From Calcarisporiella thermophila CBS 279.70 (taxonomy: Eukaryota; Fungi; Calcarisporiellomycota): a stretch of DNA of 64,000 nucleotides. The translations under genes and the position numbers were made by a program. Within the stretch, counting starts at the first letter, position 1; the number at the start of each line of letters is the position of its first letter. Below are positions 23,671 to 55,253 of this stretch, piece after piece. The DNA lies in contig NW_027192196.1 in NCBI RefSeq assembly GCF_041956535.1, positions 923,823-987,822 of the forward strand. The letters are read 5' to 3'. The notes beneath the pieces are model-generated. The model was not told where the DNA came from, searched no databases, and worked only from the letters and a program-made list of their open reading frames with translations.

Positions 23671-24351
23671 TCACAACTCATCTACGTAATTGCTTACTGC
23701 AGTGGCAAGCAATATCCGCGAGTACAGCTTGTGCATTATTTTTGTAGGTCCCATTATCCATTTCCACTCCTCGGGCATGTGCGAAATAATGGAGCCGAAC
23801 CTTACATGTATTAGGTCCACCTCTTCTTTGTCTTTCTTTTCGGGACGCATAATGGAAAGATAATTATATCCAGTAGTATCGCTGAGCTTCCAGCGAAATA
23901 AAATTTCATCTTCAGAACGCCTATCTACTATAAGGGGACCAATACGATACATTGATTCCACTTCGTCGAAGGATGTATTAGGGGCTGGTTGAAATTTATG
24001 TCGTTTAACTGATTCTAAAGTTGCACTCTCCCTTTCAGCATGGTTTGGCGACATCCATCGAATAAGGGCTAGTTCGGGCTTAAACGCTCGAATTGAGAAA
24101 AATTTCCTCGCTAAACCCTCCAAGTTAAACTTCTTGCTTTCATCGGATGTTAAGTAGATTTTGCGCTCTACACAGTCGATATTGACAGCATCCTTGTCGC
24201 AGACTTCGAGCATTAATCTTGGTAACTCTTCTCGAGGTAAGCAACGAGTATGATGCAATTGATAATGATGATATAATATTAGAGTATCAGCGGCCAATTC
24301 GCTGACACCGGCAAAGCCTGCAAGGAGCAAAATTTTACGGCGGAGTGACAT
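23671..24351 (-). CDS. Hypothetical protein, 226 aa, intronless
   Basis: Long ORF with ATG in an AT-rich setting and a hydrophobic N-terminus. C-terminal MHKLYSRILLATAV resembles motifs in uncharacterised fungal/bacterial proteins; family not assigned. Confidence 0.7.
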   Translation of the reverse strand: MSLRRKILLLAGFAGVSELAADTLILYHHYQLHHTRCLPREELPRLMLEVCDKDAVNIDCVERKIYLTSDESKKFNLEGLARKFFSIRAFKPELALIRWMSPNHAERESATLESVKRHKFQPAPNTSFDEVESMYRIGPLIVDRRSEDEILFRWKLSDTTGYNYLSIMRPEKKDKEEVDLIHVRFGSIISHMPEEWKWIMGPTKIMHKLYSRILLATAVSNYVDEL

Positions 24352-25091: not shown

Positions 25092-25279
25092 ATGTTTTCG
25101 TTTTTTTAATTCATTATTAACATATTCTTAATATACATGTATTTGTATATCCGTTCAATTTATTTTTTTTTTATTTTTGTCGTGTATCAAATATATAGCG
25201 CAAATATACAAAAAGTAGTTAATATACAGAGGCTATTAGCATTGATACGGAAATAGAGTATTCATCTGATCAAAATATT

Positions 25280-26714
25280 TCACGGACCAAAAATTCGTCC
25301 ATCGCCTCCTGCTCCTCCAAGCGCAGATATCATTGTCGTCGGCTGTCGTAGTTCCTTTAATCCCACGAAACCTCTTCTATCACGTCGGTTCATGAATTTC
25401 CTCCAATTTGCCTTCAATCTTAGCAATAGCCGGTCCACCTCTCGTTGCTGTTGATCATCGCTTAGAATAGATGCAAGCACGCTTGTCATCTGGAGCATTC
25501 GTGCAGCAGTATCAGTGACGGGTATACCAGATTCAAAATCAATGAACAATTTTGCAAATACATCTTCAAGTCGTTCCATCATCGGGTAGATTACATGATC
25601 ACGAAAACTTTTAAGAGCCATTGTGCGGACATTTGGCAGTTGTTGGTGTAGAGTATTTAAGAACTTGGTGGAAGATATTTCTTGTTGTAGCGGGAGGAAA
25701 ACACCCTCGAAATAGGGAAGTACAGTCCCAAAAAAGAATGACCATAGCTCAACTAGGCGTGACACGAGTTTCTCATCGTTAACCCCAAAAAGCTTCGCAG
25801 AAAGTGTAAACATCCCATTTCTTAGTAAGTCGTCCACATCATCAAAGAGAGAAGGAGAGATCGGATCTGTCATAGAGCGTCTAAAGCAAGCACAATTGAT
25901 AGAAATAAAAAAAAGAAAAAAAAGTAAATCATCTTGTTGAATTAAAATTAAGAAATACCTCTTACCTAACTAAGTTATTCAAATCTTCGATGCTTCCTTT
26001 GATACCTTCCCCATTAAAGAGAGGTAATACTTTTACGCAAAGACTCTGCCACGCATCGTCTTGGAGCTCAGCAAATCTCTCCATCTCACGCGCCATCACT
26101 TTCGCGTCAAGTGTCCATAGTGATTTCTGAAGTGTCGCAGAAGCAATTGCTAATGGTGAAGCAGGACGAGATGAATCCTTTAGTGAGGAAGATATGTGAT
26201 GTGGGTGATGCGATGGGTGAAGATTTCGTTCCGAGAATGCAGGACTTGCAGGAACAGAGGGGGAGAGAGCAATAGAAGGAGAAGGGAAGCCAGTCAGGGA
26301 GTAAGATGTGTTGCTTCTTGCAGTGAGGGGGACACTGGTCAGAGTTGGAGACGGGAGACGTAGAGAGTGCGAGCGATGTCTTTCTTGCTTAATTGGTGGC
26401 TTTAAAGGAGGTGGGCGGGGTTTACGCTCAGTAGAAGGCGTAGGTTGCTGTTGCTGGGATGGACGTTGTCGATAGGGGTGATGGCTACTATTGGTAGTGT
26501 GTGGTTGATGTTGTAATCGTGCATCCTGTTGCTGGTGATATGGTGGAAATGTAGATGTAGGAGCCGAAGTCCCGAGGCGATCGAAATCTAAAGCTTGCGA
26601 GGGAGGAGAAAATGATTGAGGAAGAGAATTCGCAGGCGATGAGGAAGAGGAAGGAGAGGCATCTGCAAGAGATGTGGTTGTTGTGGTAGGCGATTCAGGT
26701 AGATAGGTCTCCAT
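25280..26714 (-). CDS. BIT61: TORC2 subunit Bit61/PRR5 (HbrB domain)
   Basis: DDAWQSLCVKVLPLFNGEGIKGSIEDLNNLVR|...LVELWSFFFGTVLPYFEGVFLPL...ARMLQMTSVLAS; Ser/Pro-rich N-terminus; one intron. Confidence 0.88.
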
Positions 26715-26825
26715 GCTTGGATTAGCGATGATATTCAGAGAGAACCATTACATTTTGGCCATATATGATTTCTTACTCCGAAATTTCTACGTCATCACTG
26801 GGGTTGGACAATATTAAGGTATCAA

Positions 26826-26831
26826 ACGCGT
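26826..26831. promoter_or_regulatory. ACGCGT (MCB-like) element in the divergent BIT61 / putative telomerase RNA promoter
   Basis: AAACGCGTG followed by a T-tract, ~75 bp upstream of the RNA's terminal helix. Confidence 0.45.
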
Positions 26832-26904
26832 GTTTTTTTTTGGTTCTTTATCTGCTACTATCTCTTCTACTGGCCATGGAAGGGAGCAGATCAGATTATC
26901 CTTA

Positions 26905-27549
26905 AACCAGAAAACTCTTTTCATTCCTGACTGCTTGATCCGGAGCCGTTTTCTTGACCAAGAGTGTAGTCCTCTTTTATGCATAGTCTAAGGCCAATCC
27001 CTCTGGGATTCCTAACCCTAAGTGTTTAACGAGATAATTCTGCCTCATTATCATTCTCCGTTGGTGAGATTGGAGTGAGGGATAAGAATTTTTCTCGCTT
27101 TTCGGTCTGCTTTAACGGTTTGCGCGCTCCTTGTGAACTTAGCCCTCTTTTCGCAATGAATATGGCGATAGTTCTATAACAGGGTGCGTTGTCGGCCTAG
27201 GACCCCAATCAAAATTTCCAGTGTTCTTGCGATCCTTTTTGACTGGAATCAAACTAACTCTAAAAACGGATCGTTTCCTTACTATGCGATTGGGCTATTC
27301 TGTTGGGCTTTTTATTGCTCGAGGGTCAAGTGTGATTCCGCTAGTATCGAAAACGACAACCTGGGCGAGTCACGGTCGATGTTTGGGGAAATGGCGAACT
27401 TCGTGGGTCACCATTAAAGGCTTGATTACCTTGCTCTCCCGGAAAACAACGACGTATTCCGCCGCTTGTCTGTTTTCCAAGTACTAGGTCCGAGTTGGGA
27501 AATGACTGTAGTGTTTCTGGCATAATTTGCCTGCAGGCAACTTTTTTTT
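26905..27549 (+). ncRNA. Putative telomerase RNA (TER/TR), ~640 nt
   Basis: Template CCUAACCCUAA 27011-27021; boundary hairpin AAUCCC-UCU-GGGAUU 26996-27010; core-enclosing helix GCAUAGUCUAAGG 26981-26993 / CCUUACUAUGC 27277-27287; pseudoknot 27216-27273; CR4/5-like junction 27385-27439; terminal helix 26907-26933 / 27493-27520; U8 tract 27542-27549. No credible protein ORF here. Ends inferred from the structure. Confidence 0.85.
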
Positions 27550-28073
27550 ACACATCAAAGAAAATGAAAGAGAACCACCGCATTATTGAGAAGAATGTTT
27601 AAGGAATCATTGACCAATGCTTAATTATTTTAATTATAGAAATACCTGTGAAGCTTAGAATTGAAACTACTATCTGAAACTGCAGGCATAGAATGCTTCA
27701 GCCCGAGTCTTAACAACAGCTAGCTTTGGTGTGGCTTAATAATATTTGTATTAAACTATATTACTAAGGATATATCTATTTTTGATGCCTTATTTTCGAT
27801 AGTTAATAGGATTTTCTGGCATCCAGTTGATAAGCAATCCATGCAGGGATGTAATTTTTATTATCTCAATATTTTCTAGAGCTTTTTTTTATCACATTTT
27901 ATTCTAAATGAGTTGTATGGTACTATCCAAATGATACGTCCCTATTTTTCAGTTGATATATTTTAATTACTCTTGAATTCGTTTATGATAATATATTCCA
28001 ATAATCAGATTTATTGATGCATTAATTATTCAAGTAATCCTTTTTTATATATATAGTAAAACCCCAACTGTTG

Positions 28074-29481
28074 TTATTTTACAATAATAGATATTTGTAC
28101 CATAAGATCAAGTAGCTGCAGATGTTCATCTGCCCCGTCGACAAGATATTTATCTATCTGACTAATCGCTTGCGAAATTTTGGCTTTCTGAATGGTTGTG
28201 AGAAGTTCGTCTTTGGCAATACGGTCATGTAGCTTCAAAAAGCATTATTGAGTAAAATCCAATCTTTGAAGAGCTCTAAAGCAATCTTACTTGATTTACT
28301 ACTTGCGCGACGGAATATCCGGAATAAATTATATCACGCACCACATTATATATTTCATCGTATGTTGCATGGAACACAGAAGTTAGTCGTTTTATCACTT
28401 GCTCGGGCACAACACCAGCAATTTCTCGAATTGAATCAGAGGTAATTTTTTTCTCACGGTGCAATCTATATGCGCTCTGCAGAAACATGATTGCCCTGCG
28501 TAAATCTCCCTCTGAGGCGCTAATGAGTTCGTCCAGTGCCTCAGGTTCACAAACAACACCTTCGGCTTGACTGATCATCTCGAGCCGAGTACGCGTGTTC
28601 ATAATATCGAGCGGTTTGAACCGAAACTTAGCACAACGTGAAGCTAGTGGCTCAATTATTCTAAGATGCTATAAATATCAGTCGCTAGTAACAATGAGAG
28701 CAAAACTTAGCTTTACATGCCTTGTCACATAATTGCAAATAAGACAAAATCGAGTCACTTTTGAGTAGGTTTCCATTGTTCGTCGAAGTGCAGATTGTGC
28801 GTCGTTTGTCATTGTGTCAGCTTCGTCTAGAATAATAATTTTAAAAGGTGGACAAGGATATCCGCTAAAAAAATATTCAATACAGTTAGTAAAAGAGCTA
28901 TCTAGTTTTTTTTTTTTAAGTGCGAACCTGACTCCTTGGCCAATTGCTGTTCTTGCAAAATTCTTCACCTTCTCACGTATAACCTGTATGCCACGCTCGT
29001 CCGATGCGTTTAATTCCAATACTCTAGTGTGCATTAACTCAGGTCTAAGAATATGATAATCTAAATTTAAATTCAATACAAAGTCTTTCAAAAATGGATT
29101 AATTTACCCAAATAACTCGCGTGCCAAAGCTAGGATTGTCGAAGTTTTACCAGTCCCAGGTGGACCATAAAAGAGCAAGTGAGGAAGCTAGTGGGAAGGT
29201 ATGTGAGAACAGAATATGGAAATAAAAATGTATATTAAATAAATACATTATTGGACTCTATTGTTTTCTTTAGGACTTGCACTGCCTGATCTTGAGCGCT
29301 AATGTCGCTCATATTTTTCGGTCGACTGATAAGTATTATCAAAAATTTTCATTTGAGTGATGTTCAAAATGCTGATTTAGGAGAGTAGGATAACATACTA
29401 TTTCTCTATCCATGGTTGATCTACTTTTGTACCGCTCGACACTTGTGTCGCTGCTGATCGCACCTGGAAAAAATTAGACAT
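28074..29481 (-). CDS. RFC2: Replication factor C small subunit (yeast Rfc2 / human RFC4 type)
   Basis: QPWIEKY|[79 protein letters not shown]. Confidence 0.95.
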
Positions 29482-41292: not shown

Positions 41293-44200
41293 ATGGATGA
41301 TGACATTAGCGGCCCTGTTGCGACAGTGTCCGCATCTCCTGCCGATGTCGAGCCTTCATTAACTGCAATAGATCCTTCTATCGTAAAGGATTATCTACAG
41401 CATTTGCTACCGGTTGTGTTCGGTGCTGATGGTGGTGATCTTGAGAATTCGCTTATTGCGTATCCTGACACTTTAGATAAGTGTCGTAAATTCGCAAATG
41501 ACCCTCAGACACTTGTGATTTATGTAGTGAAGGAGAAAGAAGAACGAAAAGATGAGGGTAAATTAATATTGTTTTTTTTTTACATATCTTTAGATTCAAT
41601 TGAAATCAGATCGCCGTATATAGCAAATGAGTATTAATGTAATAATTTTTTTCATAGATGATACTACTCCGCAGGCTTTTCTATACTCGCTATCGTTTGA
41701 AATTTCTTGTCAGCCCAATCAGGTTGGATGGCTTGCACTTATCAAACGTACTCCCACGCTAGATGGAACACGACCTTTGATGTCGCAACTTCAATTTTTG
41801 ACCCTTCCTGGACCTGGTGCAGCCGGAGAGCCCAGTACTGTCAGCCCGTATGAAGCTCTCCATTCTTACATACATTTTGCATTCAGCCCGTTCTTCAATG
41901 CATATGTGAGCTCAAAAGGAGAGAGCGCGGAAGTCGGTGCAGGGAAACGTGACGATAAAGATAACAAAATGGGTAAGTAGCTATATGGATATTATAATTT
42001 TTTTCATTGAGTAACCCGAAATTTTATTGAATATAGGCATTCCGATGGCAAAAAAGAAGATAGCTGAACTTGAGCTTTCGCTTCTTCATCTTCAACAAAA
42101 TGTTGACATTCCTGAGATTCAACTTAATATCCATCCAATTGTTCAGAGAGCAGTAGATAAATGTCGTGAACAGGGCAAGCGCGTTACAGTGGATGCTATA
42201 GACCCCTCCTTAGTCTCGGATTCAACTTTCCTGAATAAACTACAGGGGGACGTTAATGGGTGGATCAAGGAAATTCAAAAAGTAACAAAACTCTCGCGTG
42301 ATCCCGCAAGTGGAACTGCAATACAAGAAGTGAACTTCTGGTTGAGTATGGAGCGTGCATTGGAAAAAATCGAAGAGCAACTCAAGAGCGATGAAATTGG
42401 TAAATTATCTTAATGACCCTTTATATACTTTTCTGCTTTGGCTAAAAAAAAGTATTGATAAATTTTTGGTTTATAGTTTTGACTCTGGATATATTAAAAC
42501 ACGCTAAACGTTTTCACGCTACTGTTAGCTTCATTGCTGATACAGGACTGAAGGAGGGAACTGAAAAAGGTATATATTTAGCTTTACAAACCATCTTATT
42601 TTTTTTTCAAATTCCTCATCCTCTAAAATTAAAATCACAATATAGTCCACAAGTACAACCAACTGATGAAAGATTTTCCACTGAACGAATTGTTGTCCTC
42701 TACTGATGTTGATAAGATTCGCGAGTCGCTTGGGTTAATCTTTGGGCACTTAAATAAGAAGCTTCGCCTCTCGTGAGTATTCATCTGTTCTAATTTAAGC
42801 TGACTTCATATTGTTTTGACGGCATTTTCTTATCATTCTCAATAGACCTTATCCAATTCGACGTGCTCTCCCACTTGTTGAAGCAATTTCCCGCGATTTG
42901 AACGACCAGCTTTTGAAAGTGTTAGGCAGTAGGAAGCTAATGTACATGGAATATGAGGATTTCGAGCGCATCACCGCTGGAGCCGAAGAAGTTTTCCATA
43001 CGTGGGACGATCTCATCAAGGAATTTACTAATGTAGCACGTGAAGTTACTCGCAAGCGCTCTGAAAAATTCCTTCCTATCAAGATTAATCCTGCACATGC
43101 AAAACTGCAAGAACGTGTCACTTACGTGCGAACATTCCGTGAACAGCATGAGCAGTTGCACCAAACCATTCTTCGTGTTATGGTACAATCAGGTGGTGGT
43201 GCTGAGGAAGAGAGCGTCAGTGTAAGCGATATTAATGCCGTTGAAGAAGTGAAGCTTGCTTATGATTGCGTGCGCAATATTGACGTGCTTGACGTTAGTC
43301 ACGAAGGCACTGAGATTTGGGTTCACTCGGAGAACGCATACAACGAAAGAGTCTCCCGCGTTGAAAATCAGATCATCGCCCGCCTTCGTGACCGTCTAGG
43401 TACAGCCAAAAATGCTAATGAGATGTTTCGGGTTTTCTCAAAATTCAATGCCCTCTTCGTGCGGCCCAAGATCCGCGGTGCCATCCAAGAGTACCAAACT
43501 CAGTTGATTGATAGCGTCAAGGAGGATATAAAGAAACTGCATGATAAATTCAAGATGCAATATCGAAACTCTGAGGCATATCACATGGCGCAGCTACGAG
43601 ATCTGCCACCAATTTCGGGTGCGATTATCTGGGCACGACAAATTGAGCGACAACTATTGGCATACATGAAGCGAGTGGAGGATGTACTCGGGAAGGGATG
43701 GGAGCTCTATGCTGATGGCCAAAAGCTTCAGTCAGAGAGTAATAGTTTCAGGAAAAAACTTGATACACGTCAGATATATGAAGCGTGGCAAGCAGAAATA
43801 ACACGTCGAGATCTCTCTGTTTCAGGGCGCATTTTTGAAATTACTCGTAATCGCGCTCAGGGGAATGCACTGCAACTTGGCATCAATTTTGATGGGCAGA
43901 TTATTACACTCTTCAAGGAGGTACGCAACCTGTTGTGGCTCGGATTCCAAGTGCCACATACCATAACTAATATTGCCAAGGATGCCAAACGTGTGTATCC
44001 TTACGCGGTGAGTTTGATGGAGACTGTGCGCACTTATTCTCAAACGGTCCATAAGGTTCAGAAAAACCAAGATATTGCAATACTTGTTGCCGGTTACCGA
44101 AATGATGTCCAAGCAATGATTGGACGAGGCATAAACCTGCGATGGGACTATTTTGTTAATACTTACGAGCCACATCGACCGCTTGCTTATGTCTCCAGTG

Positions 44201-47200
44201 CTCTTGATACCCGTGAAAATCGTCATGTCGCGTTTGTTCGTGAATTTGCCAGCGTAGTGTCCATATTCCAGGATAAAGTGGACGGAGCCATCTCAGTGAA
44301 TGAGGAGATCCACCGTGCACTCGAAGATCTTAAGATGTGTCCCTATCAAGCGGATAAATTTGATAGCAACCTGAGTAAAATTCAGAAGCTAATCGACCGC
44401 CTGAATCTGGAATCATATTCCAATCTTGATAGCTGGGTTGCACAATTGGATGCTCGAGTTGAATCAGTGCTTACCCAGCGCCTGCAACAAGCTATTAAAT
44501 CATGGACCTCCGCCTTCCTTCAGGTGGAAGAGCATAGTCAGGAAGCAGATTACGCAGGCGACGCGGTAGTCAAAAGCGGAAGTAAACGCAAAAGAAAAGC
44601 AATTGGTAAAGGCGATAATATAGAGGCAGCCGCGCCTGGTAGCAAGTCTGAGATGCGGCCTACGCTCAAGACACTTGTGCATGAAATCCGCATTCGTAAT
44701 CAGGTTATGTACCTTGACCCGCCGATCGAACAGGCGCGCGCCAACTGGTTCAGTCAGCTCCATGATTGGCTTGCAGTGGTTTGCAATCTTCCGCGTATTC
44801 AGAGTTCCCGCTATGAAATTGGGCTTAATGTCGCAACCCCAGGAGTGAATGGCGAGCTAACGAATTACGTGAATTTGCTTACGTCTTTACCCGATGGTAG
44901 CCTTGAGGGTGCCTATTCCATAGTCGAAAACAAGGTTCGAGAGGTTTCGGAGTATGTTGGCATCTGGCTTCAGTACCAGTCACTTTGGGATCTTGAATCT
45001 AGCTATGTGATCAAGATTTTGGGTGAAGATCTCGCTAAGTGGCAACAGATTCTCTTGGAGATCAAGAAAGCACGGGCAACCTTTGATAACTCTGAGACCG
45101 AGCAGTCATTTGGACCAATTGTGGTCGATTACGAACAAGTGCAGAGTAAAGTAAACGCTAAATATGACCAGTGGCAGCGCGAGATTCTAAATAAATTCGG
45201 AAGTCTGCTTGGTGGGACCATGCGCGAATTTCATTCAGCTGTATTACGCTCTCGCCTCGAGCTTGAGCAGCATTCGGTTGAAGGAAGTTCAACCAGCGAA
45301 GTTGTTACCTTCATCACTTTTGTCCAAGATCTTAAGACAAAAATTGATAAATGGCGACGAGACGTGGAGATTTTCCGCCAAGGTCAAAAAACACTCGAGC
45401 GTCAGCGCTATCAATTCCCTAATGACTGGCTCTACGTGGATCAAGTGGATGGCGAGTGGGCTGCATTCAATGAAATTCTCACGCGGAAGAATAATGCCAT
45501 CCAGGAACAAATCGCGGGTCTTCAGATGCAAATCATTGCTGAAGACAAGATTGTCTCACAGAAAATTCGAGATATAGTCGACGAGTGGGAGAAGAACAAA
45601 CCTGTCCAAGGGGACATTAAGCCAGATATCGCTACCAATACCCTTAATATCTTTGAGGGTCGTGTAATTCGCCTCAAAGAGGAATATGAGATGGTATGTC
45701 GTGCCAAAATTGCACTTGGTCTCGATCAGACTACCGATGCTCGCCTCGACCCTGTGCTCGAGGAGTTACGCGATTTGAAGACAGTCTGGACTGAAATCTC
45801 TAAGATATGGCAATCTGTAAACGAAATTCGAGAGACCCCGTGGTCTTCAATTGTACCTCGCAAGCTCCGCCAGCAACTCGATAATTTGCTTGGCGCTCTC
45901 AAAGAGCTCCCAAGTAGTATGCGTACCTATGCAGCATATGAGTATGTGCAAGACGTTCTTCGCAATTACATCAAAGTCAACCCACTGCTTTCAGACCTAA
46001 AGTCGGAAGCACTTCGAGAGCGGCACTGGCGTAACCTCTTCAAAACTCTGCGCGTGGAAGGTCGCATCACCATGTCGGAGATGACGCTTGCTAACCTCTG
46101 GGATCTTGATTTGCGGAAAAATGAGCAGATTGTGCGTGACGTTATTATCACTGCACAAGGTGAAATGGCGCTTGAGGAGTTCCTCAAAGACGTGAAGGAG
46201 ACATGGACAAACTATGTTCTTGATCTTGTCAACTATCAGAATAAGGTAAGCGGCCTTTTTGTGAATCCTTTTGCTAACCTAGGATCTTGACTGTCAATAT
46301 ATAATAGTGCCGTTTGATCAAAGGAGCAGCTTGGGATGATCTCTTCAATAAATGCGGCGAAAATATCAACTCTCTTACTGCAATGAAGCTGTCGCCATAC
46401 TACAAGGTGTTTGAGGAGGAGGCTTCTGCATGGGAGGACAAACTCAATCGCGTACACGTGTTGTTCGACGTTTGGATCGATGTTCAACGTCAATGGGTGT
46501 ATCTCGAAGGGATCTTTAGCGGAAGCGCTGATATCAAACATTTGTTACCCGTTGAAACATCCCGCTTCCAGAACATTAATTCGGAATTCCTCACTGTGAT
46601 GAAGAAAGTGTACAAGTCACCATTTGTGTTGGATGTACTCAATATACCCAATATCCAAAAGTCACTTGAGCGTTTGGCAGATCTGCTCTCAAAGATCCAG
46701 AAGGCACTCGGCGAGTACTTGGAACGCGAGCGCTCCTCTTTCCCCCGCTTTTATTTTGTTGGCGATGAGGATCTACTTGAAATTATCGGCAACAGCAAAG
46801 ACATAGTTAGGATCCAGAAGCACTTTAAGAAGATGTTTGCTGGAGTTGCCAATCTCCTGCTCAATGAGGACGCAACTGTAATTCGCGGTATGACTTCACG
46901 TGAAGGAGAGGAGGTGGTGTTCAAAACGCCCATTTCGCTTGTGAATGGCCCTAAAATTAATGAATGGCTCACGAGTTTTGAAAAAGAGATGCGCACAACC
47001 CTTGGACTACTCCTCGCTGAATCTTTTACGGATATGAATAGCTTCTTCCTTGCTGAAGAACTTTCAACCGAAAATATGATGACATGGATTGATCAATATC
47101 CGGCTCAGCTTGTGGTACTTACAGCCCAAATTGTGTGGACTGAATTAGTGGAGAGATCACTTACCTCGATGCACGATGGCAATCGGTCCGACGTTGGGCC

Positions 47201-50200
47201 GCTTGAAAATGCCCTACATTTAGTAGAGCGCACTCTCAACATCCTTGCTGACACCGTGCTCCTCGATTTGCTACCAATCAAGCGACGGAAATGCGAGCAT
47301 CTCATCACAGAATTAGTACATCAAAGAGACGTAATTCGACAGCTAATTCAGCACAAGGTCTGCTCTCCCAAAGATTTCGACTGGCTTTACCAGATGAGGT
47401 TCTACTATAATGAGAGCGTTGAAGACCCGCTACAGCGGCTCAACATTAAACTCGCCAACGCCTGCTTCCTCTATGGATTCGAATATCTGGGTGTGCCTGA
47501 TCGCTTAGTCCAGACTCCCCTTACCGACCGCTGCTATCTTACTCTTACCCAAGCACTTGAAAGTCGCCTTGGTGGGTCACCGTTTGGTCCTGCGGGTACA
47601 GGAAAGGTATAATAGTTTGTTTTTGTGAAGCGAGTCCCGTGAATACTCCTATTTAATTTTTTTACTCTTAGACTGAATCTGTTAAGTCACTCGGTGTCCA
47701 GCTGGGTCGTTTCGTACTAGTTTTCTGCTGTGACGAAACCTTCGATTTCCAAGCCATGGGGCGTATTTTTATCGGACTTTGTCAAGTTGGTGCGTGGGGC
47801 TGCTTTGATGAGTTCAATCGTCTCGAGGAACGAATCTTGTCGGCTGTCTCGCAACAAGTCCAAACTATTCAATTGGGGTTGCGCCGATTAAAGGAAAATC
47901 CGAACACAGAAATTGAATTAGTGGAGAAGCAAGTTAAACTCAACGAAAACACAGGCATATTTATCACAATGAACCCTGGATACGCCGGACGTTCAAACCT
48001 CCCGGATAACCTGAAGAAACTATTCCGTAGCATTGCAATGACAAATCCGGATCGTGAGCTAATTGCCCAAGTTATGCTCTATTCCCAAGGTTTCCGGACC
48101 GCGGAGTCGCTTGCGTCTAAAGTCGTCCCGCTCTTCAATCAATGCAAGGCGCGTCTCACACCGCAATCACACTACGATTTCGGATTACGTGCACTTAAGA
48201 GTGTTCTTGTCAGTGCGGGTAACTTGAAACGAGACAGGCTACAATACGTGCGGCAAGAAATTGAGGAGGGTACCAAGGACAATTCCGAGTACGAGCGAAT
48301 ATCGGAGTCGGTGCCTGAGCAAGAGATTCTCATGCAGAGTATTCGCGAAACCATCCTTCCAAAATGTGTTGCCGAGGATATTCCCATTCTCAAAGGGCTG
48401 CTCAACGAGATATTCCCTGGAGTTGACTATGCTCCGGCCAGTCTAGAGAAGCTCAAAGAAGAGATCAAAAAGGTGTGCATCGAGAGACGCCTCGTCGATG
48501 GTGAATTTTGGATGGAAAAGGTGATCCAATTGTACCAGATTCAGAACATTCACCACGGTTTGATGATGGTCGGGCCATCTGGTAGCGGTAAGTCGACTGC
48601 GTGGAAGGTACTGCTCACCGCGCTTGAGCGAGTGCAAGGAATCGAGGGCGTGTCCTATACTATCGATCCCAAAGCTATTCCAAAAGAGGCCTTATACGGG
48701 AGTCTTGATCCCACCACCCGTGAATGGACGGATGGTTTGTTTACACACATTCTCCGAAAGATTGTCGATAACGTCCGAGGTGAAAGCTCAAAGCGACATT
48801 GGATCATATTTGATGGTGATGTTGATCCGGAATGGGTGGAGAATTTGAACAGGTACGCTATATCTTCATTCTATCTCTCAGCATTGCAATTGGGTTGGAA
48901 CTTACCTATCCTTTTAGTGTCCTCGATGACAACAAGCTTCTCACTCTACCGAATGGTGAGCGTTTGGGTCTCCCTCCAAATGTGCGTATTATGTTTGAGG
49001 TTGAGACGCTCAAATACGCCACTCCAGCTACGGTGTCACGCTGCGGGATGGTTTGGTTCAGTGATGATGTGGTGACGATGCCAATGATTTTCAGCAACTA
49101 TTTGGAATCTTTGCGCAATGTTCCGCTAGATGAAGAAGAGGTTTCAGGCCGCCGAATGGAGCAAGAAGAGACGGGATCTTCCTCCGCTAACCTGAACACA
49201 CAAAGGGCTTGTGCAAACATTCTAGAGCCTTACTTTAGAGATGAATCTGGGCTTGTTGGTAAGGCACTTGAATATGCCTTCAGCTTAAATCACATCATGG
49301 ACTTTACCAGAATGCGCGTCCTCGATACTCTTTTCTCGTTGCTAAATAAAACGGTTCGCAACGTTATCGAGTACAATTCGTCGCACCCAGATTTCCCGAT
49401 GACAAACGATCAGCTCGAAGCATATCTCACCAAGCGTCTTGTCTATTGTATCATCTGGAGTTTCGCTGGCGATACAAAACTCGACCTGCGAGCTGAGCTA
49501 GGCAATTACGTGCGAGGCATCACGACCATCGAATTGCCTCCCAATTTGGTTGGAACCTCGATTATTGACTATGATGTTCAGATCGAGAAGGGAGAGTGGG
49601 AGTCATGGCAGACGAAAGTTCCAGTTATTGAGATTGAAACCCACACGGTGGCATCAGCGGATGTTGTCATTCCTACCATTGATACCGTGCGTCATGAAGA
49701 GGTGCTGTATTCATGGCTTTCCGAGCACAAGCCTCTGATTCTGTGTGGTCCTCCTGGTTCAGGTAAATGATTCATGCAGATTTCTGGTGTACTTTGCATA
49801 AAATGGAAACCAGTTTAACATTTCTTTCTAACTCATCAGGTAAAACAATGACCCTGTTCAGTGCGCTTCGAAAGTTGCCTGAGCTTGAGGTGGTCGGCCT
49901 AAACTTTTCAAGTGCTACCACCCCTGAGATGATACTAAAGACCTTTGAGCAATATTGCGAATACCGCAAAACACCCAATGGCCTGGTGCTTTCACCTTTG
50001 ATGATTGGTCGATGGCTTGTAATCTTCTGCGATGAAATCAACTTGCCGGCAACAGATAAGTACGGCACCCAGCGAGTTATATCTTTCTTGCGACAGCTTG
50101 TTGAATACAACGGGTTCTGGCGCGCGTCAGACAAGCAGTGGGTTCGTCTTGAGCGCATTCAGTTCGTTGGAGCATGTAATCCTCCGACTGACCCGGGACG

Positions 50201-53200
50201 TGTACCAATGACCCATCGTTTCTTGCGACATGCACCGCTTGTGATGGTCGACTATCCTGGGCAAATATCGCTGATGCAAATCTATGGGACATTTGTACGC
50301 GCCATGCTCAAAGTGGTGCCAATGCTTCGTGGCTATGCTGATGCTCTCACGGCTGCGATGGTTGAATTCTACTTGATGTCACAGCAACGTTTCACCTCCG
50401 ATATACAAGTTCACTATGTGTACAGTCCACGTGAGCTTACACGCTGGATGCGTGGTATCTTTGAGGCGATCAAGCCGTTAGAGGAGCTTTCTGTTGAAGG
50501 CCTGGTGCGCGTGTGGGCACACGAGGGTCTGCGGCTCTTCCAGGATCGGTTGGTTACGGAGGAAGAGCGGCGCTGGACAGACGAAAATATCGATGCAGTT
50601 GCCCTCAAACATTTCCCGAATATCGACAAAGAAGAAGCCCTTGGACGCCCGATCCTCTTCTCCAACTGGCTCTCCAAGTACTACATCCCGGTCGACCGTG
50701 AAAAGTTGCGCGAATATGTTAAAGCTCGGCTCAAAGTGTTTTACGAGGAAGAGTTGGATGTGCCTCTGGTCCTGTTCAACGATGTATTGGACCACGTTTT
50801 GCGCATTGATCGGGTCTTCCGGCAGATGCAAGGGCATTTGCTGTTGATTGGTGTCAGTGGAAGTGGAAAGGTTTGCCATCAATATCTTTATTTTTTACAA
50901 AAGTATATGCGTTGTATAACCACTATTTTCTTATTTAGACTACTCTCTCAAGATTTGTCGCTTGGATGAATGGATTGAGCGTATTTCAAGTAAAGGTGCA
51001 CAACAAATACACCGTCGAAGACTTTGATGAGGACCTGCGCACGGTTTTACGTCGCGCAGGCTGCAAGGGGGAGAAGATTTGCTTTATCATGGATGAGTCG
51101 AATGTAATGGATTCTGGATTCCTTGAACGCATGAACACTCTGCTTGCCAATGCTGAGGTAAATGCTGATTTTAATAGCGAATCTCTGTCTAAATCAGGTA
51201 TGCTTAACTAACTGATTTGGTGTCTAGGTCCCTGGTCTTTTCGAAGGCGATGAATACGCTTCTCTTATGACACAGTGCAAGGAAGGCGCGCAACGAGATG
51301 GACTAATGCTCGATTCTCACGAAGAATTATATAAATGGTTCACCCACCAGGTGATGAAAAATCTGCACGTTGTGTTCACCATGAATCCACCTGAAGGTGG
51401 CTTGGCATCCCGCGCTGCCACCTCCCCTGCTCTGTTCAATCGTTGTGTGCTTGATTGGTTCGGAGACTGGTCGGATCAAGCATTCTATCAAGTCGGAAAA
51501 GAATTCACAAACAATCTCGATCTCGACGTCCCCACATATGGTGCGCCGATCAACTTCCCAGTGGCGTACCGCGACTTGTCTTTGCCACCTACTCACCGTG
51601 ATGCCATCATCAACGCGTTCGTCTTTGTGCACCAGTCGCTATACGAGATCAACAAGAAGCTGGCTAGCCGGACGGGCAAAATTAATTTCGTTACTCCTCG
51701 CCACTTCCTTGACTTTATCAACCATTACGTGCGCCTGTACAACGAGAAACGGGATGATCTCGAGGAACAGCAGCGTCACTTGAATATCGGTCTCGACAAA
51801 CTACGCGAGACGGTGGTGAAGGTCGAGGAGCTCCGCAAGAGCTTGGCGATAAAGAAGAACGAGCTCGAGGAGAAGAATGCACAGGCGAACGAGAAATTGA
51901 AGAAGATGGTTGCTGACCAACAAGAGGCCGAGCAAAAGAAGGCGGCATCTATCGAGATCCAGAGATCGCTTGAGGTTCAAAACCGCCAGATCGAGGAGCG
52001 TCGGGCGATCGTCATGGGCGATTTGGCCAAGGCGGAGCCTGCTGTTATCGAGGCGCAGAAGAGCGTCAGCAACATCAAGAAGCAGCACTTGACTGAAGTG
52101 CGTGCGATGAGCAACCCTCCTGAGGCTGTCAAAATGGCCATGGAGTCTGTGTGCACGCTGCTTGGCCACCGCATCGATAGCTGGAAGACGGTCCAGAGTA
52201 TCATCCGCCGGGATGACTTCATCGCAAGCATCGTCAACTTCGACACGGATCGGCAGATGACCCGGTTTTTGAGGGATAAGATGCGTAACGAGTACCTCAA
52301 TAACCCTAGCTTCAACTTTGAGACAGTGAACCGTGCAAGCAAAGCTTGCGGACCCCTCGTGAAATGGGTGTGTGCCCAGGTGAACTACTCGGAGATCTTG
52401 GATCGAGTCGGCCCGCTTCGAAATGAAGTCGAGGAGCTCGAGCGCAGCGCCGAGGAGACGAAGATGCGCGCTGCCGCGATCGAAAAGATGATCGAGGAGC
52501 TCGAGAACAGCATTGCCACCTACAAGGAGGAGTATGCCTTGCTCATCAGCGAGACGCAGGCGATCAAGACCGAGATGGAGCGCGTCAAGTCCAAGGTCGA
52601 CCGCAGTCTTACCCTGCTGAGCAGTCTCTCCTCGGAGAAGGAGCGGTGGGAGGCTGCCAGCCAGGCCTTCGACACCGAGATGGCCACCATCGTTGGCGAC
52701 GTGCTGCTCTCTGCGGCCTTTCTCGCCTATGGGGGCTATTTCGACCAGCAGTACCGTGAGCTGCTCTTCGGCAAGTGGACGGACCACTTGCTTCAGGCCG
52801 ACATCCGCTTCAAGCAGGAGATTTCCCTCACCGAGTACCTGTCGACGGCCGACGATCGCCTCTCTTGGCAAGCCAATTCGCTGCCCGCCGACGACCTGTG
52901 CACGGAGAACGCCATCATGCTCAAGCGGTTCAACCGGTATCCGCTCATCATCGATCCCTCCGACCAGGCCCTTAACTTCTTGATGAATGAGTACAAGGAG
53001 CGCAAGATCTCCGTGACAAGCTTCCTTGACGACTCCTTCATCAAGAACCTGGAGAGTGCGCTGCGCTTCGGCAATCCACTCCTCATCCAAGACGTAGAGC
53101 ACCTCGACCCGATCCTTAACCCGGTCCTGAATCGCGAGCTGCGTCGCACTGGCGGCCGTGTGCTCATCCGCCTCGGCAATCAAGACATCGACTTCTCGCC

Positions 53201-55253
53201 TGCGTTCACGCTCTTCCTCTCCACGCGCGACCCCTCGGTCAGCTTCCCGCCCGACGTGTGCAGCCGAGTCACGTTCGTCAACTTCACGGTGACCCGCAGC
53301 AGCTTGCAGAGCCAGTGTCTCAACAAGGTACTCAAAGCGGAGCGCCCCGACGTCGATCAGCGCCGAACCGATCTCATCAAGCTGCAAGGGGAATTCAAGC
53401 TTCGCCTGCGCCACCTCGAGAAGTCGCTCTTGCAGGCGCTCAACGAGTCCAAGGGCAACATCCTGGATGATGATAAGGTGATCGAGACGCTTGAGACACT
53501 CAAGCGCGAGGCTGCCGAGGTGTCTCGAAAGGTTGAGGAGACGGAGAATGTCATGCAAGAGGTGGAGGAGATGACTGCGGTCTACACACCCCTTGCCCAA
53601 GCCTGCAATGGGATCTTCTTCATTATGGAGCAGCTCAATTTGCTCAACCATTTCTATCAGTTTTCGCTCGACTTTTTCTACGACATATTCCACACGGTGC
53701 TGCACAACAACCCCCACCTCAAGAACGTCAAGGACCCCGATGCGCGTCTGGAAATCCTCTTCCGGGACCTGTTCAATGTGTCGTTCCAGCGCGTGTCGCG
53801 CGCGCTGCTGCATGAGGATCATATCATGTTTGCCATGCTGCTAGCCCAGATCAAATTGGGTGGATCAGCGGAGGCCCTCAATGAGGCCGAGTTCGACTTC
53901 CTACTCAAAGGCACCAAGGGAGGCGAGGAGGGGGAGAGGAAGGAGGAGGTCGACGACGACGACGACATCCGCGCCTTGCCTGTCGATATCGTGGAGGAAG
54001 GCTGTCGCGGCATAGTTAAGAAGCTCGTGGCGCTCCCCGCCTTCGCCGGGCTTGTAGAGCACATTTCACAGAACCAAGACCTCTGGCGGTCCTTTATCGG
54101 CAGTAGCAACGCGGAGAATCATGTGCCAACGTGTTGGGAGAGCGAGGGCTCGACCCCCGCATCTGCCGTTAGCCTGCGCAAGATGCTTGTCGTGAAGTGC
54201 TTCCGCCCTGACCGTCTGCTTTCTGCGGCTACCCAGTTTGTGGGTGCGGTGTTCGGAGCCGACTTCCTCGCACAATACGAGCTCAACTTCAAGGGGCTCG
54301 TGTTCGACGAGATCAACGCCGCGACTCCGGTCGCGTTGTGCTCGGTACCGGGATACGATGCCAGCTACCGGGTCGACAACCTGGTCGAGGAGACCAAGAT
54401 TCGGTGCACCTCGGTCGCCATGGGTTCCGCCGAAGGGTTCACGCTGGCGGAACAAGCCATCTCCACGGCGATCAAGAACGGAAGCTGGGTCCTGCTCAAG
54501 AACGTGCACCTTGCCCCCCAGTGGCTTGGGCAGCTTGAGAAGCGCCTGCACAGCCTGAAACCCAACCGCAGCTTCCGGCTGTTCCTTACGATGGAGACGA
54601 ATCCCAAGGTGCCGGTGAACTTGTTGCGCCTATCGCGCATCGTCATGTTCGAGCCTCCGCCGGGCATCAAGGCCAACCTTCAGGACTCCCTGCGAAGCAT
54701 CCCCGAGGCGAAGTGGACCAAGGGGCCGATCGAACGGGTGCGTCTCTATTTCTTACTCGCCTGGCTGCATGCCGTTGTCCAGGAGCGGCTGCGCTATGTG
54801 CCCCTGGGATGGTCCAAGGGCTACGAGTTCAACGACTCCGACCTGGACGCCGCTCTCAACACCATTGACGTGTGGGTGAACATGGTCGCGCAGGGACGCG
54901 CAAACGTGTCGCCGGACAAGATCCCCTGGAAAGCAATCCGCTCGCTGATCGCACAGTATGCCTATGGCGGCCGGGTGGACGAGGCGCCGGACATGCAGCT
55001 GCTCGAGTCGTTTGTCAACGAGCTCTTCACCCCCAAGAGCTACGATCTCGACTTCACACTGGTGGATCGCCCCGACGATGAGCAGCGGCTGGTCATCCCG
55101 GACGGGCATAAGCGCGATCAGTTCGCGGCGTGGGTGAACAAGCTTCCCGAGGCAGAGCCTCCGTCATGGCTCGGTCTCCCCAAGAACGCCGACCGCGTGC
55201 TGAGTGAATCCAAGGGCTTTGCCATGCTGGCCAAACTCTGCAAAGTGCTGTGA
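41293..55253 (+). CDS. DYN1: Cytoplasmic dynein heavy chain
   Basis: Tail ([22 protein letters not shown]), linker ([17 protein letters not shown]), four Walker A motifs ([32 protein letters not shown]), coiled-coil stalk/MTBD, AAA5-6; ends [10 protein letters not shown]...KLCKVL*. Confidence 0.98.

What the first reader, a model, noticed from the sequence alone, without database searches (positions are those of the whole stretch)
26905..27549. Unannotated candidate telomerase RNA gene with a complete, compact vertebrate-like architecture
Seen: the ~1.35-kb gap between BIT61 and RFC2 has no credible protein ORF, yet folds by hand into one closed domain. A terminal helix (CCAGAAAACU 26907-16 / AGUGUUUCUGG 27510-20; UCAUUCCUGACU 26922-33 / AGUUGGGAAAUGA 27493-505) branches into two arms. 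Arm 1 (CUUGACC 26953-59 / GGUCAAG 27324-30; UAGUCC / GGGCUA; GCAUAGUCUAAGG 26981-93 / CCUUACUAUGC 27277-87) encloses a boundary hairpin, the template CCUAACCCUAA, two long hairpins (~27030-27097, ~27105-27204) and a pseudoknot. Arm 2 (27341-27487) ends in a three-way junction. Established: this order (core-enclosing helix, template boundary, template, pseudoknot, then a CR4/5/STE domain) is the conserved telomerase RNA core. Inference: this is the organism's TER. TERs diverge too fast for simple homology search, and to my knowledge are poorly described in early-diverging fungi. At ~640 nt it would be much smaller than the >1-kb ascomycete TERs.
Basis: partly seen in the sequence, partly recalled or inferred. 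Interest (0 to 1): 0.95.

Follow-up and report, generated by a model that had tools for sequence, protein, structure and literature searches.

The report
Fungal telomerase RNA, mismatched template
This is very probably the telomerase RNA gene of the early-branching fungus Calcarisporiella thermophila, a group in which I found none described, and its template reads as if it should make TTAGGG although the chromosome ends carry TTAGG.

Summary
The structure is real. The 26907-27520 domain folds as described (z about -4). It has a boundary hairpin abutting CCUAACCCUAA, a human-like U-A pseudoknot that outscores everything in 54 Mb of shuffles, and a CR4/5-like junction with a 4-bp P6.1. It is single-copy, intergenic, matches no Rfam family, and is the only one of 18 such 11-mer sites in the genome with these parts. 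The organism is Calcarisporiella thermophila (Mucoromycota), which has a TERT gene. Read conventionally, this template makes TTAGGG. Best reading: this is the TER and it copies only CCUAA(CC) in a 5-nt register (about 0.5). Rivals: a retained TTAGGG paralogue beside an unfound TTAGG copy (0.2), a one-base assembly error (0.08), not a TER (0.12). No paralogue or homologue was found, so covariation is untested; expression rests on one soil RNA contig. The core is fungal-type, not vertebrate-type, and compact fungal TERs are already proposed (Malassezia). The scan noted other TER candidates and the TTAGG telomeres elsewhere in this genome.

The parts
26826..26831 (.). ACGCGT (MCB-like box) in the ~190-bp divergent interval shared with BIT61; function untested
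   Evidence: sequence
26907..27520 (+). Closed RNA domain, candidate telomerase RNA body (about 615-645 nt; ends not mapped)
26907..26941 (+). 5' strand of terminal and arm-1 helices (pairs with 27510-20, 27493-505, 27323-31)
   Evidence: pair probabilities 0.7-0.99
26980..26993 (+). Core-enclosing helix, 5' strand (pairs with 27277-88, directly after the pseudoknot)
26996..27010 (+). Template-boundary hairpin AAUCCC/GGGAUU, abutting the template
   Evidence: p 0.65-0.89
27011..27021 (+). Template-like CCUAACCCUAA, single-stranded in the model; 27011-17 (CCUAACC) fits TTAGG, the whole fits TTAGGG
27030..27204 (+). Two long hairpins between template and pseudoknot; covered by a soil RNA contig (27030-27231)
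27216..27274 (+). H-type pseudoknot: stem 1 27216-22/27242-48 (7 bp), U-rich loop 27223-28, stem 2 27229-40/27262-74 (12 bp, U5:A5 next to the junction, bulged C27267)
27341..27487 (+). Arm 2 carrying the three-way junction
27386..27440 (+). CR4/5-like junction: P5 27386-89/27437-40, P6 27390-415, A27416, P6.1 AAGG/CCUU 27417-32 with 8-nt loop starting CUUGA (NUNGN), G27433
   Evidence: criteria from PMC3592445
27522..27639 (+). Possible 3'-end signals: AUAAUU (one mismatch to the Aspergillus AUAAGU 5' splice site), hairpin 27527-40, U8 27542-49, weak branch-point-like sites near 27610-25 and AG at 27638-39
   Evidence: untested
25280..26714 (-). Flanking gene BIT61 (HbrB domain), divergent
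28074..28602 (-). Flanking RFC small-subunit gene, last exons, convergent

Best explanation
This is the single telomerase RNA gene of Calcarisporiella thermophila, probably a Pol II transcript of about 615-645 nt. TERT would bind the template-pseudoknot core and the P6/P6.1 junction (inferred from N. crassa, S. pombe and vertebrates). It has kept the ancestral fungal template UAACCCUAA but has two Cs 5' of it. The enzyme copies A27015 to C27011 (adding TTAGG), stops at the abutting hairpin, and realigns the primer's GG on C27016-17, either on 2 bp alone or with the third C bulged so that UAA still pairs. Occasional use of the perfect 6-nt register gives the rare TTAGGG units. Shown: the parts, their order, single copy, the telomere sequence. 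Inferred: TERT binding, Pol II, the register shift.
For: Pseudoknot scores 19 on a relaxed descriptor; the best in 54.4 Mb of shuffles is 16. Only this one of 18 non-telomeric CCTAACCCTAA sites has z below -2, a strong pseudoknot and an abutting hairpin. Template context GGGAUU-CC-UAACCCUAA-GUGU parallels Aspergillus ggaatc[TAACCCTAA]tgt (PMC10767889 Table 1). Part order equals the N. crassa core (PMC3592445). P6.1 has a 4-bp stem with U and G at loop positions 2 and 4. TERT TRBD and C-terminal domains are present. No paralogue by BLAST, two covariance models or 3-mismatch patterns. No rival at about 107 CTAACCTAA sites. CCUAACC is exactly 1.4 TTAGG repeats, and 3 TTAGGG units do occur in the arrays. 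A soil RNA contig lies on the RNA and on neither flanking gene; 6 of its 7 substitutions spare the pairing (P 0.022). Consistent misalignment is reported for A. aculeatus (PMC3603654).
Against: The 6-nt register offers 5 perfect base pairs against 2 (or 5 with a bulge), and folding shows nothing that hides 27018-21, so a more than 95% preference for the weaker register has no support from the RNA alone. I found no precedent for consistently dropping a G. The P6.1 loop is 8 nt, not 5. No Rfam telomerase model matches. No homologue was found, so covariation is untested. The descriptor was written after seeing the candidate. Only about a third of CTAACCTAA sites, and no shorter templates, were screened. 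The RNA evidence is one unstranded contig at depth 2.8.
Confidence: 0.5

Rival explanations
1. It is a retained ancestral TTAGGG-type TER paralogue, little used; a second, diverged or unassembled copy with a CCUAACCUAA-type template makes the TTAGG telomeres.
For: Template is the standard TTAGGG template. Close precedent: Mimulus cardinalis expresses an AACCCGA paralogue while its telomere has only the AAACCG repeat (PMC12169523). The 3 TTAGGG units all lie within the four most proximal repeats, as relics would. The assembly has N gaps.
Against: No second copy found by five kinds of search; the Mimulus paralogues are about 87% identical and would have been found. ACCTAACCTAA is enriched inside the genome (109 vs 48 control) and sits in promoters, so the TTAGG switch looks old, yet this RNA's structure is intact.
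Confidence: 0.2
2. It is the TER with an ordinary TTAGG template (CCUAACCUAA); the third C is an assembly error or a strain-level allele.
For: Removing one C gives exactly two TTAGG repeats. The assembly is listed as 454 / SOAPdenovo (PMC11393059 supplement), and 454 miscalls homopolymers.
Against: In 12.1 kb of dynein coding sequence with about 2300 homopolymer runs, every frame break falls at a GT-AG intron and none looks like a frameshift; BUSCO is 97.4% complete. UAACCCUAA is also the conserved ancestral fungal template. The soil contig starts 9 nt after the template, so it cannot decide.
Confidence: 0.08
3. It is another structured non-coding RNA (or structured DNA) and the telomerase-like parts are coincidence.
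For: Template does not match the telomere conventionally; no Rfam TER match; first readers proposed at least nine other TER candidates in this genome, so the label is easily given.
Against: Expected chance pseudoknots of this score are about 0.1 per genome by extrapolation, before requiring the 11-mer 195 nt upstream, the abutting hairpin and the P6.1. RNase MRP, RNase P and U6 are encoded elsewhere; no tRNA.
Confidence: 0.12

Closest known systems
Pezizomycotina TER (Neurospora crassa, Aspergillus; Rfam RF02462)
   Same: Core-enclosing helix, local boundary hairpin, UAACCCUAA template after a GGRAU strand, two hairpins before the pseudoknot, compact P5/P6/P6.1 junction, no canonical Sm site, possible AU-type 5' splice site at the 3' end
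   Different: About 0.63 kb against 1-2.4 kb; no PK2.1 helix; 8-nt P6.1 loop; two extra nucleotides between boundary strand and template; telomere is TTAGG; no covariance-model match
Vertebrate TR (Rfam RF00024)
   Same: Compact pseudoknot with U-rich loop, U-run:A-run next to the junction and a single bulge in stem 2 (human layout recalled from my own knowledge, not aligned here); A - 4-bp P6.1 - G arrangement
   Different: Boundary is a local hairpin, not P1; no H/ACA domain seen; no model match
Malassezia putative TER (PMC12506658) and Ustilago maydis TER (PMC9564094)
   Same: Compact fungal TER with template, boundary stem, two stems, pseudoknot, CR4/5
   Different: No clear Sm site here; not inside an mRNA 3' UTR (both neighbours are on the other strand); different phylum; telomere differs from template
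Insect TTAGG telomerase RNAs (PMC11892584)
   Same: TTAGG product, template-adjacent boundary stem
   Different: Those have a matching 5-nt template and lack CR4/5 and the enclosing helix; no homology implied
Mimulus cardinalis TR2 (PMC12169523)
   Same: A CCC-type template in a genome whose telomere has the CC-type repeat
   Different: There the active paralogue is readily found; here none was

Membership tests
Telomerase RNA (general) | Single-stranded template covering more than one repeat of the organism's own telomere | tested here: inconclusive
   Single-stranded. CCUAACC covers 1.4 TTAGG repeats, but the longer in-frame match is to TTAGGG, which is 3 of 110 units
Telomerase RNA (general) | Template-boundary helix just 5' of the template | tested here: met
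   26996-27010, 6 bp, 0-nt spacer; predicted, not probed
Telomerase RNA (general) | Pseudoknot with U-rich loop and U-A run able to form U-A.U triples | tested here: met
   27216-74; score 19 vs at most 16 in 54 Mb of shuffles; triples inferred
Telomerase RNA (general) | Core-enclosing helix joining pseudoknot to boundary element | tested here: met
   26980-93/27277-88
Telomerase RNA (general) | Covariation of helices across relatives | tested here: inconclusive
   Only one 96% identical 201-nt contig; 1 of 7 changes breaks a pair, P 0.022; no homologues in metagenomes or BIT61 loci
Telomerase RNA (general) | Binds TERT and templates the repeat | not testable with these tools
   TERT gene present; binding needs experiment
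Telomerase RNA (general) | Transcribed on the template strand | tested here: inconclusive
   One contig from an rRNA-depleted soil RNA run, no strand or ends
CR4/5 domain (vertebrate, Pezizomycotina, S. pombe) | Three-way junction with 4-bp P6.1 stem | tested here: met
   27386-440
CR4/5 domain (vertebrate, Pezizomycotina, S. pombe) | 4-5-nt loop NUNGN | tested here: inconclusive
   Loop is 8 nt; its first five read CUUGA, which fits NUNGN
Vertebrate TR (RF00024) | P1-defined boundary, box H/ACA domain, model score | tested here: not met
   Local hairpin boundary; no ANANNA between two 3' hairpins by inspection; no match at this locus
Ascomycete TER (RF02462) | Model score above cut-off | tested here: not met
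   No match; genome search was run with a strict filter and is not proof of absence
RNase MRP / RNase P / U6 | Rfam model match | tested here: not met
   Each family has its full-length gene on another contig
Pol III (plant/ciliate-type) TR | No internal terminator; T-run at the end | tested here: not met
   Nine internal T4-T5 runs, while U6 and several tRNAs here end at T4-T5; T8 at the end

The most novel reading that the evidence does not exclude
The first telomerase RNA from Mucoromycota, in which the telomere changed from TTAGGG to TTAGG without loss of a template C: the copied window slid towards the boundary hairpin, so the enzyme ignores a perfect 5-bp alignment and uses a shorter one. 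That would show template register being set by RNP geometry rather than by base pairing, and give a second route for telomere-sequence evolution.
Probability: 0.45. Interest if true: 0.85.

Novelty: new variant of a known kind. Interest (0 to 1): 0.72.

Why it matters
Fungal TERs are reported only from Ascomycota and some Basidiomycota (PMC9564094, PMC12506658; my searches found none for Mucoromycota). A compact Mucoromycota TER with a fungal core and a human-like pseudoknot would give a seed for searching early-diverging fungi and bear on the ancestral opisthokont TER. The organism is a thermophile, which suits structural work. The template-telomere mismatch makes a standing question directly testable: whether telomere repeats change only through template mutation and paralogue turnover, or also through a shift of register.

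Tried and rejected
Rfam scans at E up to 10: nothing relevant. Vertebrate and ascomycete TER models on the genome: no match here. (TTAGGG)4 in the genome: none. Synteny: BIT61 has other neighbours in Ambispora, Basidiobolus, Entomortierella, Phycomyces and Geosiphon, and those loci hold no template or model match. Metagenome scans by template pattern and by BIT61 exon 1: nothing. Paralogue searches: negative. A helix hiding the 3' half of the template: not predicted at 37 or 45 C (95). K. lactis-type pairing downstream of the template: the UAAC at 27027-30 is out of phase for both repeats (inspection). Pol III origin: judged unlikely. Protein-coding: no Pfam hit for internal ORFs. Spliced gene models were searched exon by exon by reference; the joined step was left out, so full-length RFC homologues and their loci were not examined.

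Full report
Organism and setting. The window is contig C6 of a 28.2-Mb, 116-contig genome. The candidate lies in a 1359-bp gap between the BIT61 start codon (26714, minus strand, HbrB domain) and the stop of an RFC small subunit (28074-76, minus strand). Short ORFs in the gap have no Pfam match. Since both neighbours are on the minus strand, a plus-strand RNA here is not part of their mRNAs.

The observation. The minimum-energy fold of 26900-27560 is -197.8 kcal/mol, z -3.97 against dinucleotide shuffles; the other strand gives -179.8, z -2.3. The hairpin 26996-27010 abuts CCUAACCCUAA at 27011-21, which stays mostly single-stranded when the pseudoknot region is held out of the nested fold. The pseudoknot has a 7-bp stem 1, a 6-nt U-rich loop and a 12-bp stem 2 with five U-A pairs next to the junction and one bulged C. 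A strict descriptor finds it once in the window and never in 7.7 Mb of shuffles; a relaxed one scores it 19 where 54.4 Mb of shuffles reach at most 16. The descriptor was written with the candidate and the human pseudoknot in mind, so this is an optimistic figure. As a real-sequence control I took the 17 other non-telomeric CCTAACCCTAA sites of the genome: none has z below -2 or a comparable pseudoknot. Arm 2 ends in a junction with P5, P6, a single A, a 4-bp stem AAGG/CCUU and a G. The loop is 8 nt; its first five bases fit the NUNGN consensus given for N. crassa and vertebrates (PMC3592445).

What it resembles. The order core-enclosing helix, boundary hairpin, template, two hairpins, pseudoknot, then a distal junction is the N. 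crassa core as described in PMC3592445. The template context closely parallels Aspergillus TERs, written ggaatc[TAACCCTAA]tgt in PMC10767889, with two more nucleotides before UAACCCUAA. A template-adjacent hairpin is the ancestral P1.1 type, which most vertebrates replaced (PMC8480181), and I see no H/ACA domain, so 'vertebrate-like architecture' holds only for the pseudoknot and P6.1. No Rfam family matches, which is expected for a TER of an unsampled phylum but gives no support. RNase MRP, RNase P and U6 are elsewhere. TERT is present on C15 with TRBD and C-terminal domains.

The problem. There is no (TTAGGG)4 in the assembly. Six contig ends carry (TTAGG)n, correctly oriented: 107 TTAGG units against 3 TTAGGG, the latter all among the four most proximal repeats. 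The arrays stop at 15-21 units, so distal telomere is not visible. ACCTAACCTAA is enriched internally (109 against 48 for the control) and occurs upstream of a ribosomal-protein gene and a helicase gene, which suggests that TTAGG is long established. TTAGG telomeres are known in a few basidiomycetes (PMC7857110). Copying the template to its 5' end gives a primer ending TTAGG. It can realign with five perfect pairs on 27017-21, which yields TTAGGG, or with its GG on 27016-17, which yields TTAGG. Nothing in the predicted fold blocks the first register.

Weighing the explanations. (a) Sole TER with a shifted register: fits the single copy, the extra 5' CC that makes CCUAACC, and the rare TTAGGG units. 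[quoted passage not shown] (b) An unused TTAGGG paralogue: Mimulus cardinalis is a close precedent (PMC12169523). Against it, BLAST, two covariance models and mismatch patterns find no second copy, and about 107 of roughly 335 CTAACCTAA sites hold no TER-like structure. A strongly diverged or unassembled copy is not excluded. (c) One-base error: the assembly is listed as 454 / SOAPdenovo, but 12.1 kb of dynein with about 2300 homopolymer runs shows frame breaks only at introns. (d) Not a TER: needs several rare features to coincide in the right order. My odds are 0.5, 0.2, 0.08 and 0.12, with the rest for mechanisms not listed; about 0.85 that the RNA is a TER homologue.

Expression and conservation. 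One public run holds part of the stretch: an rRNA-depleted soil metatranscriptome. Laid on 25200-29200, it gives a single 201-nt contig on 27030-27231, 96% identical, and nothing on the flanking genes. Four of its seven substitutions are unpaired, two keep a pair (G-U to A-U, C-G to U-G) and one breaks a pair; placing the same changes at random gives this or better in 2.2% of trials. This is weak, unstranded evidence from one contig, and it begins after the template. No homologue was found in metagenomes, and BIT61 synteny is not kept in five other early-diverging fungi.

Biogenesis, inferred. Nine internal T4-T5 runs, in a genome where U6 and several tRNAs end at T4-T5, argue against Pol III. 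No canonical Sm site is evident. AUAAUU one base after the terminal helix resembles the AUAAGU 5' splice site of the A. niger TER intron (PMC4299874), with weak branch-point and AG signals downstream; a hairpin and U8 lie inside that stretch. Either could set the 3' end.

Novelty. As of 2022 and 2025, fungal TERs were reported from Ascomycota and some Basidiomycota only, and my searches found none for Mucoromycota; the library lacks most subscription papers. Compact size alone is not new. Earlier scan notes list other TER candidates and the TTAGG telomeres in this genome; I confirmed the telomeres myself and could not locate the other candidates, as the notes give no coordinates. Verdict: a strong TER candidate for an unsampled phylum, with an unexplained template-telomere mismatch that one primer-extension assay would resolve.

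Noticed in passing
G000 contig ends C4, C10, C13, C38, C67, C87 (L077, L075, L076, L073, L005, L074): Telomeres of C. thermophila are pentameric (TTAGG)n, the arthropod-type repeat, with 3 proximal TTAGGG units
   Followed up: yes
L128:1500-1512 (RPL37-like promoter), L110:1500-1520 (PRP22-like helicase promoter), L078-L082: CCTAA teloboxes upstream of housekeeping genes; ACCTAACCTAA about twofold enriched genome-wide; gene names by eye from the translations
   Followed up: partly
L128, intron at about 1390-1210 (minus strand): The ribosomal-protein gene intron holds a GATGAG...CTGA-like, paired stretch that may be a C/D snoRNA
   Followed up: no
G000:C9:552480-552910 (-), L087: RNase MRP RNA gene (111.8 bits); a CCTAACCCTAA lies 150 nt downstream in unstructured AT-rich DNA, probably chance; no T-run at its 3' end
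   Followed up: partly
G000:C7:1040035-1040348 (+); G000:C30:253305-253417 (+): Nuclear RNase P RNA and a single U6 gene; U6 shares TGATGACGTAG upstream with the candidate's upstream region (opposite orientation), probably a common CRE-like site
   Followed up: partly
window 23671-24351 (-): 226-aa single-exon ORF with no Pfam match and no homologue among 5.8 billion proteins of similar length
   Followed up: partly
L147:640-745 (G000:C6 near 750470): Long inverted repeats carrying CTAACCTAA on both strands in an intergenic region
   Followed up: no
G000:C15:206720-209509 (-), L002-L004: TERT gene, intron-rich, with TRBD, T motif and C-terminal domain; thumb and template-binding residues not examined
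   Followed up: partly
window 42898-55253 (+): Cytoplasmic dynein heavy chain, used as an assembly-quality control
   Followed up: yes
L094:410-481: A tRNA-Thr gene with no T4 run within 60 nt downstream
   Followed up: no
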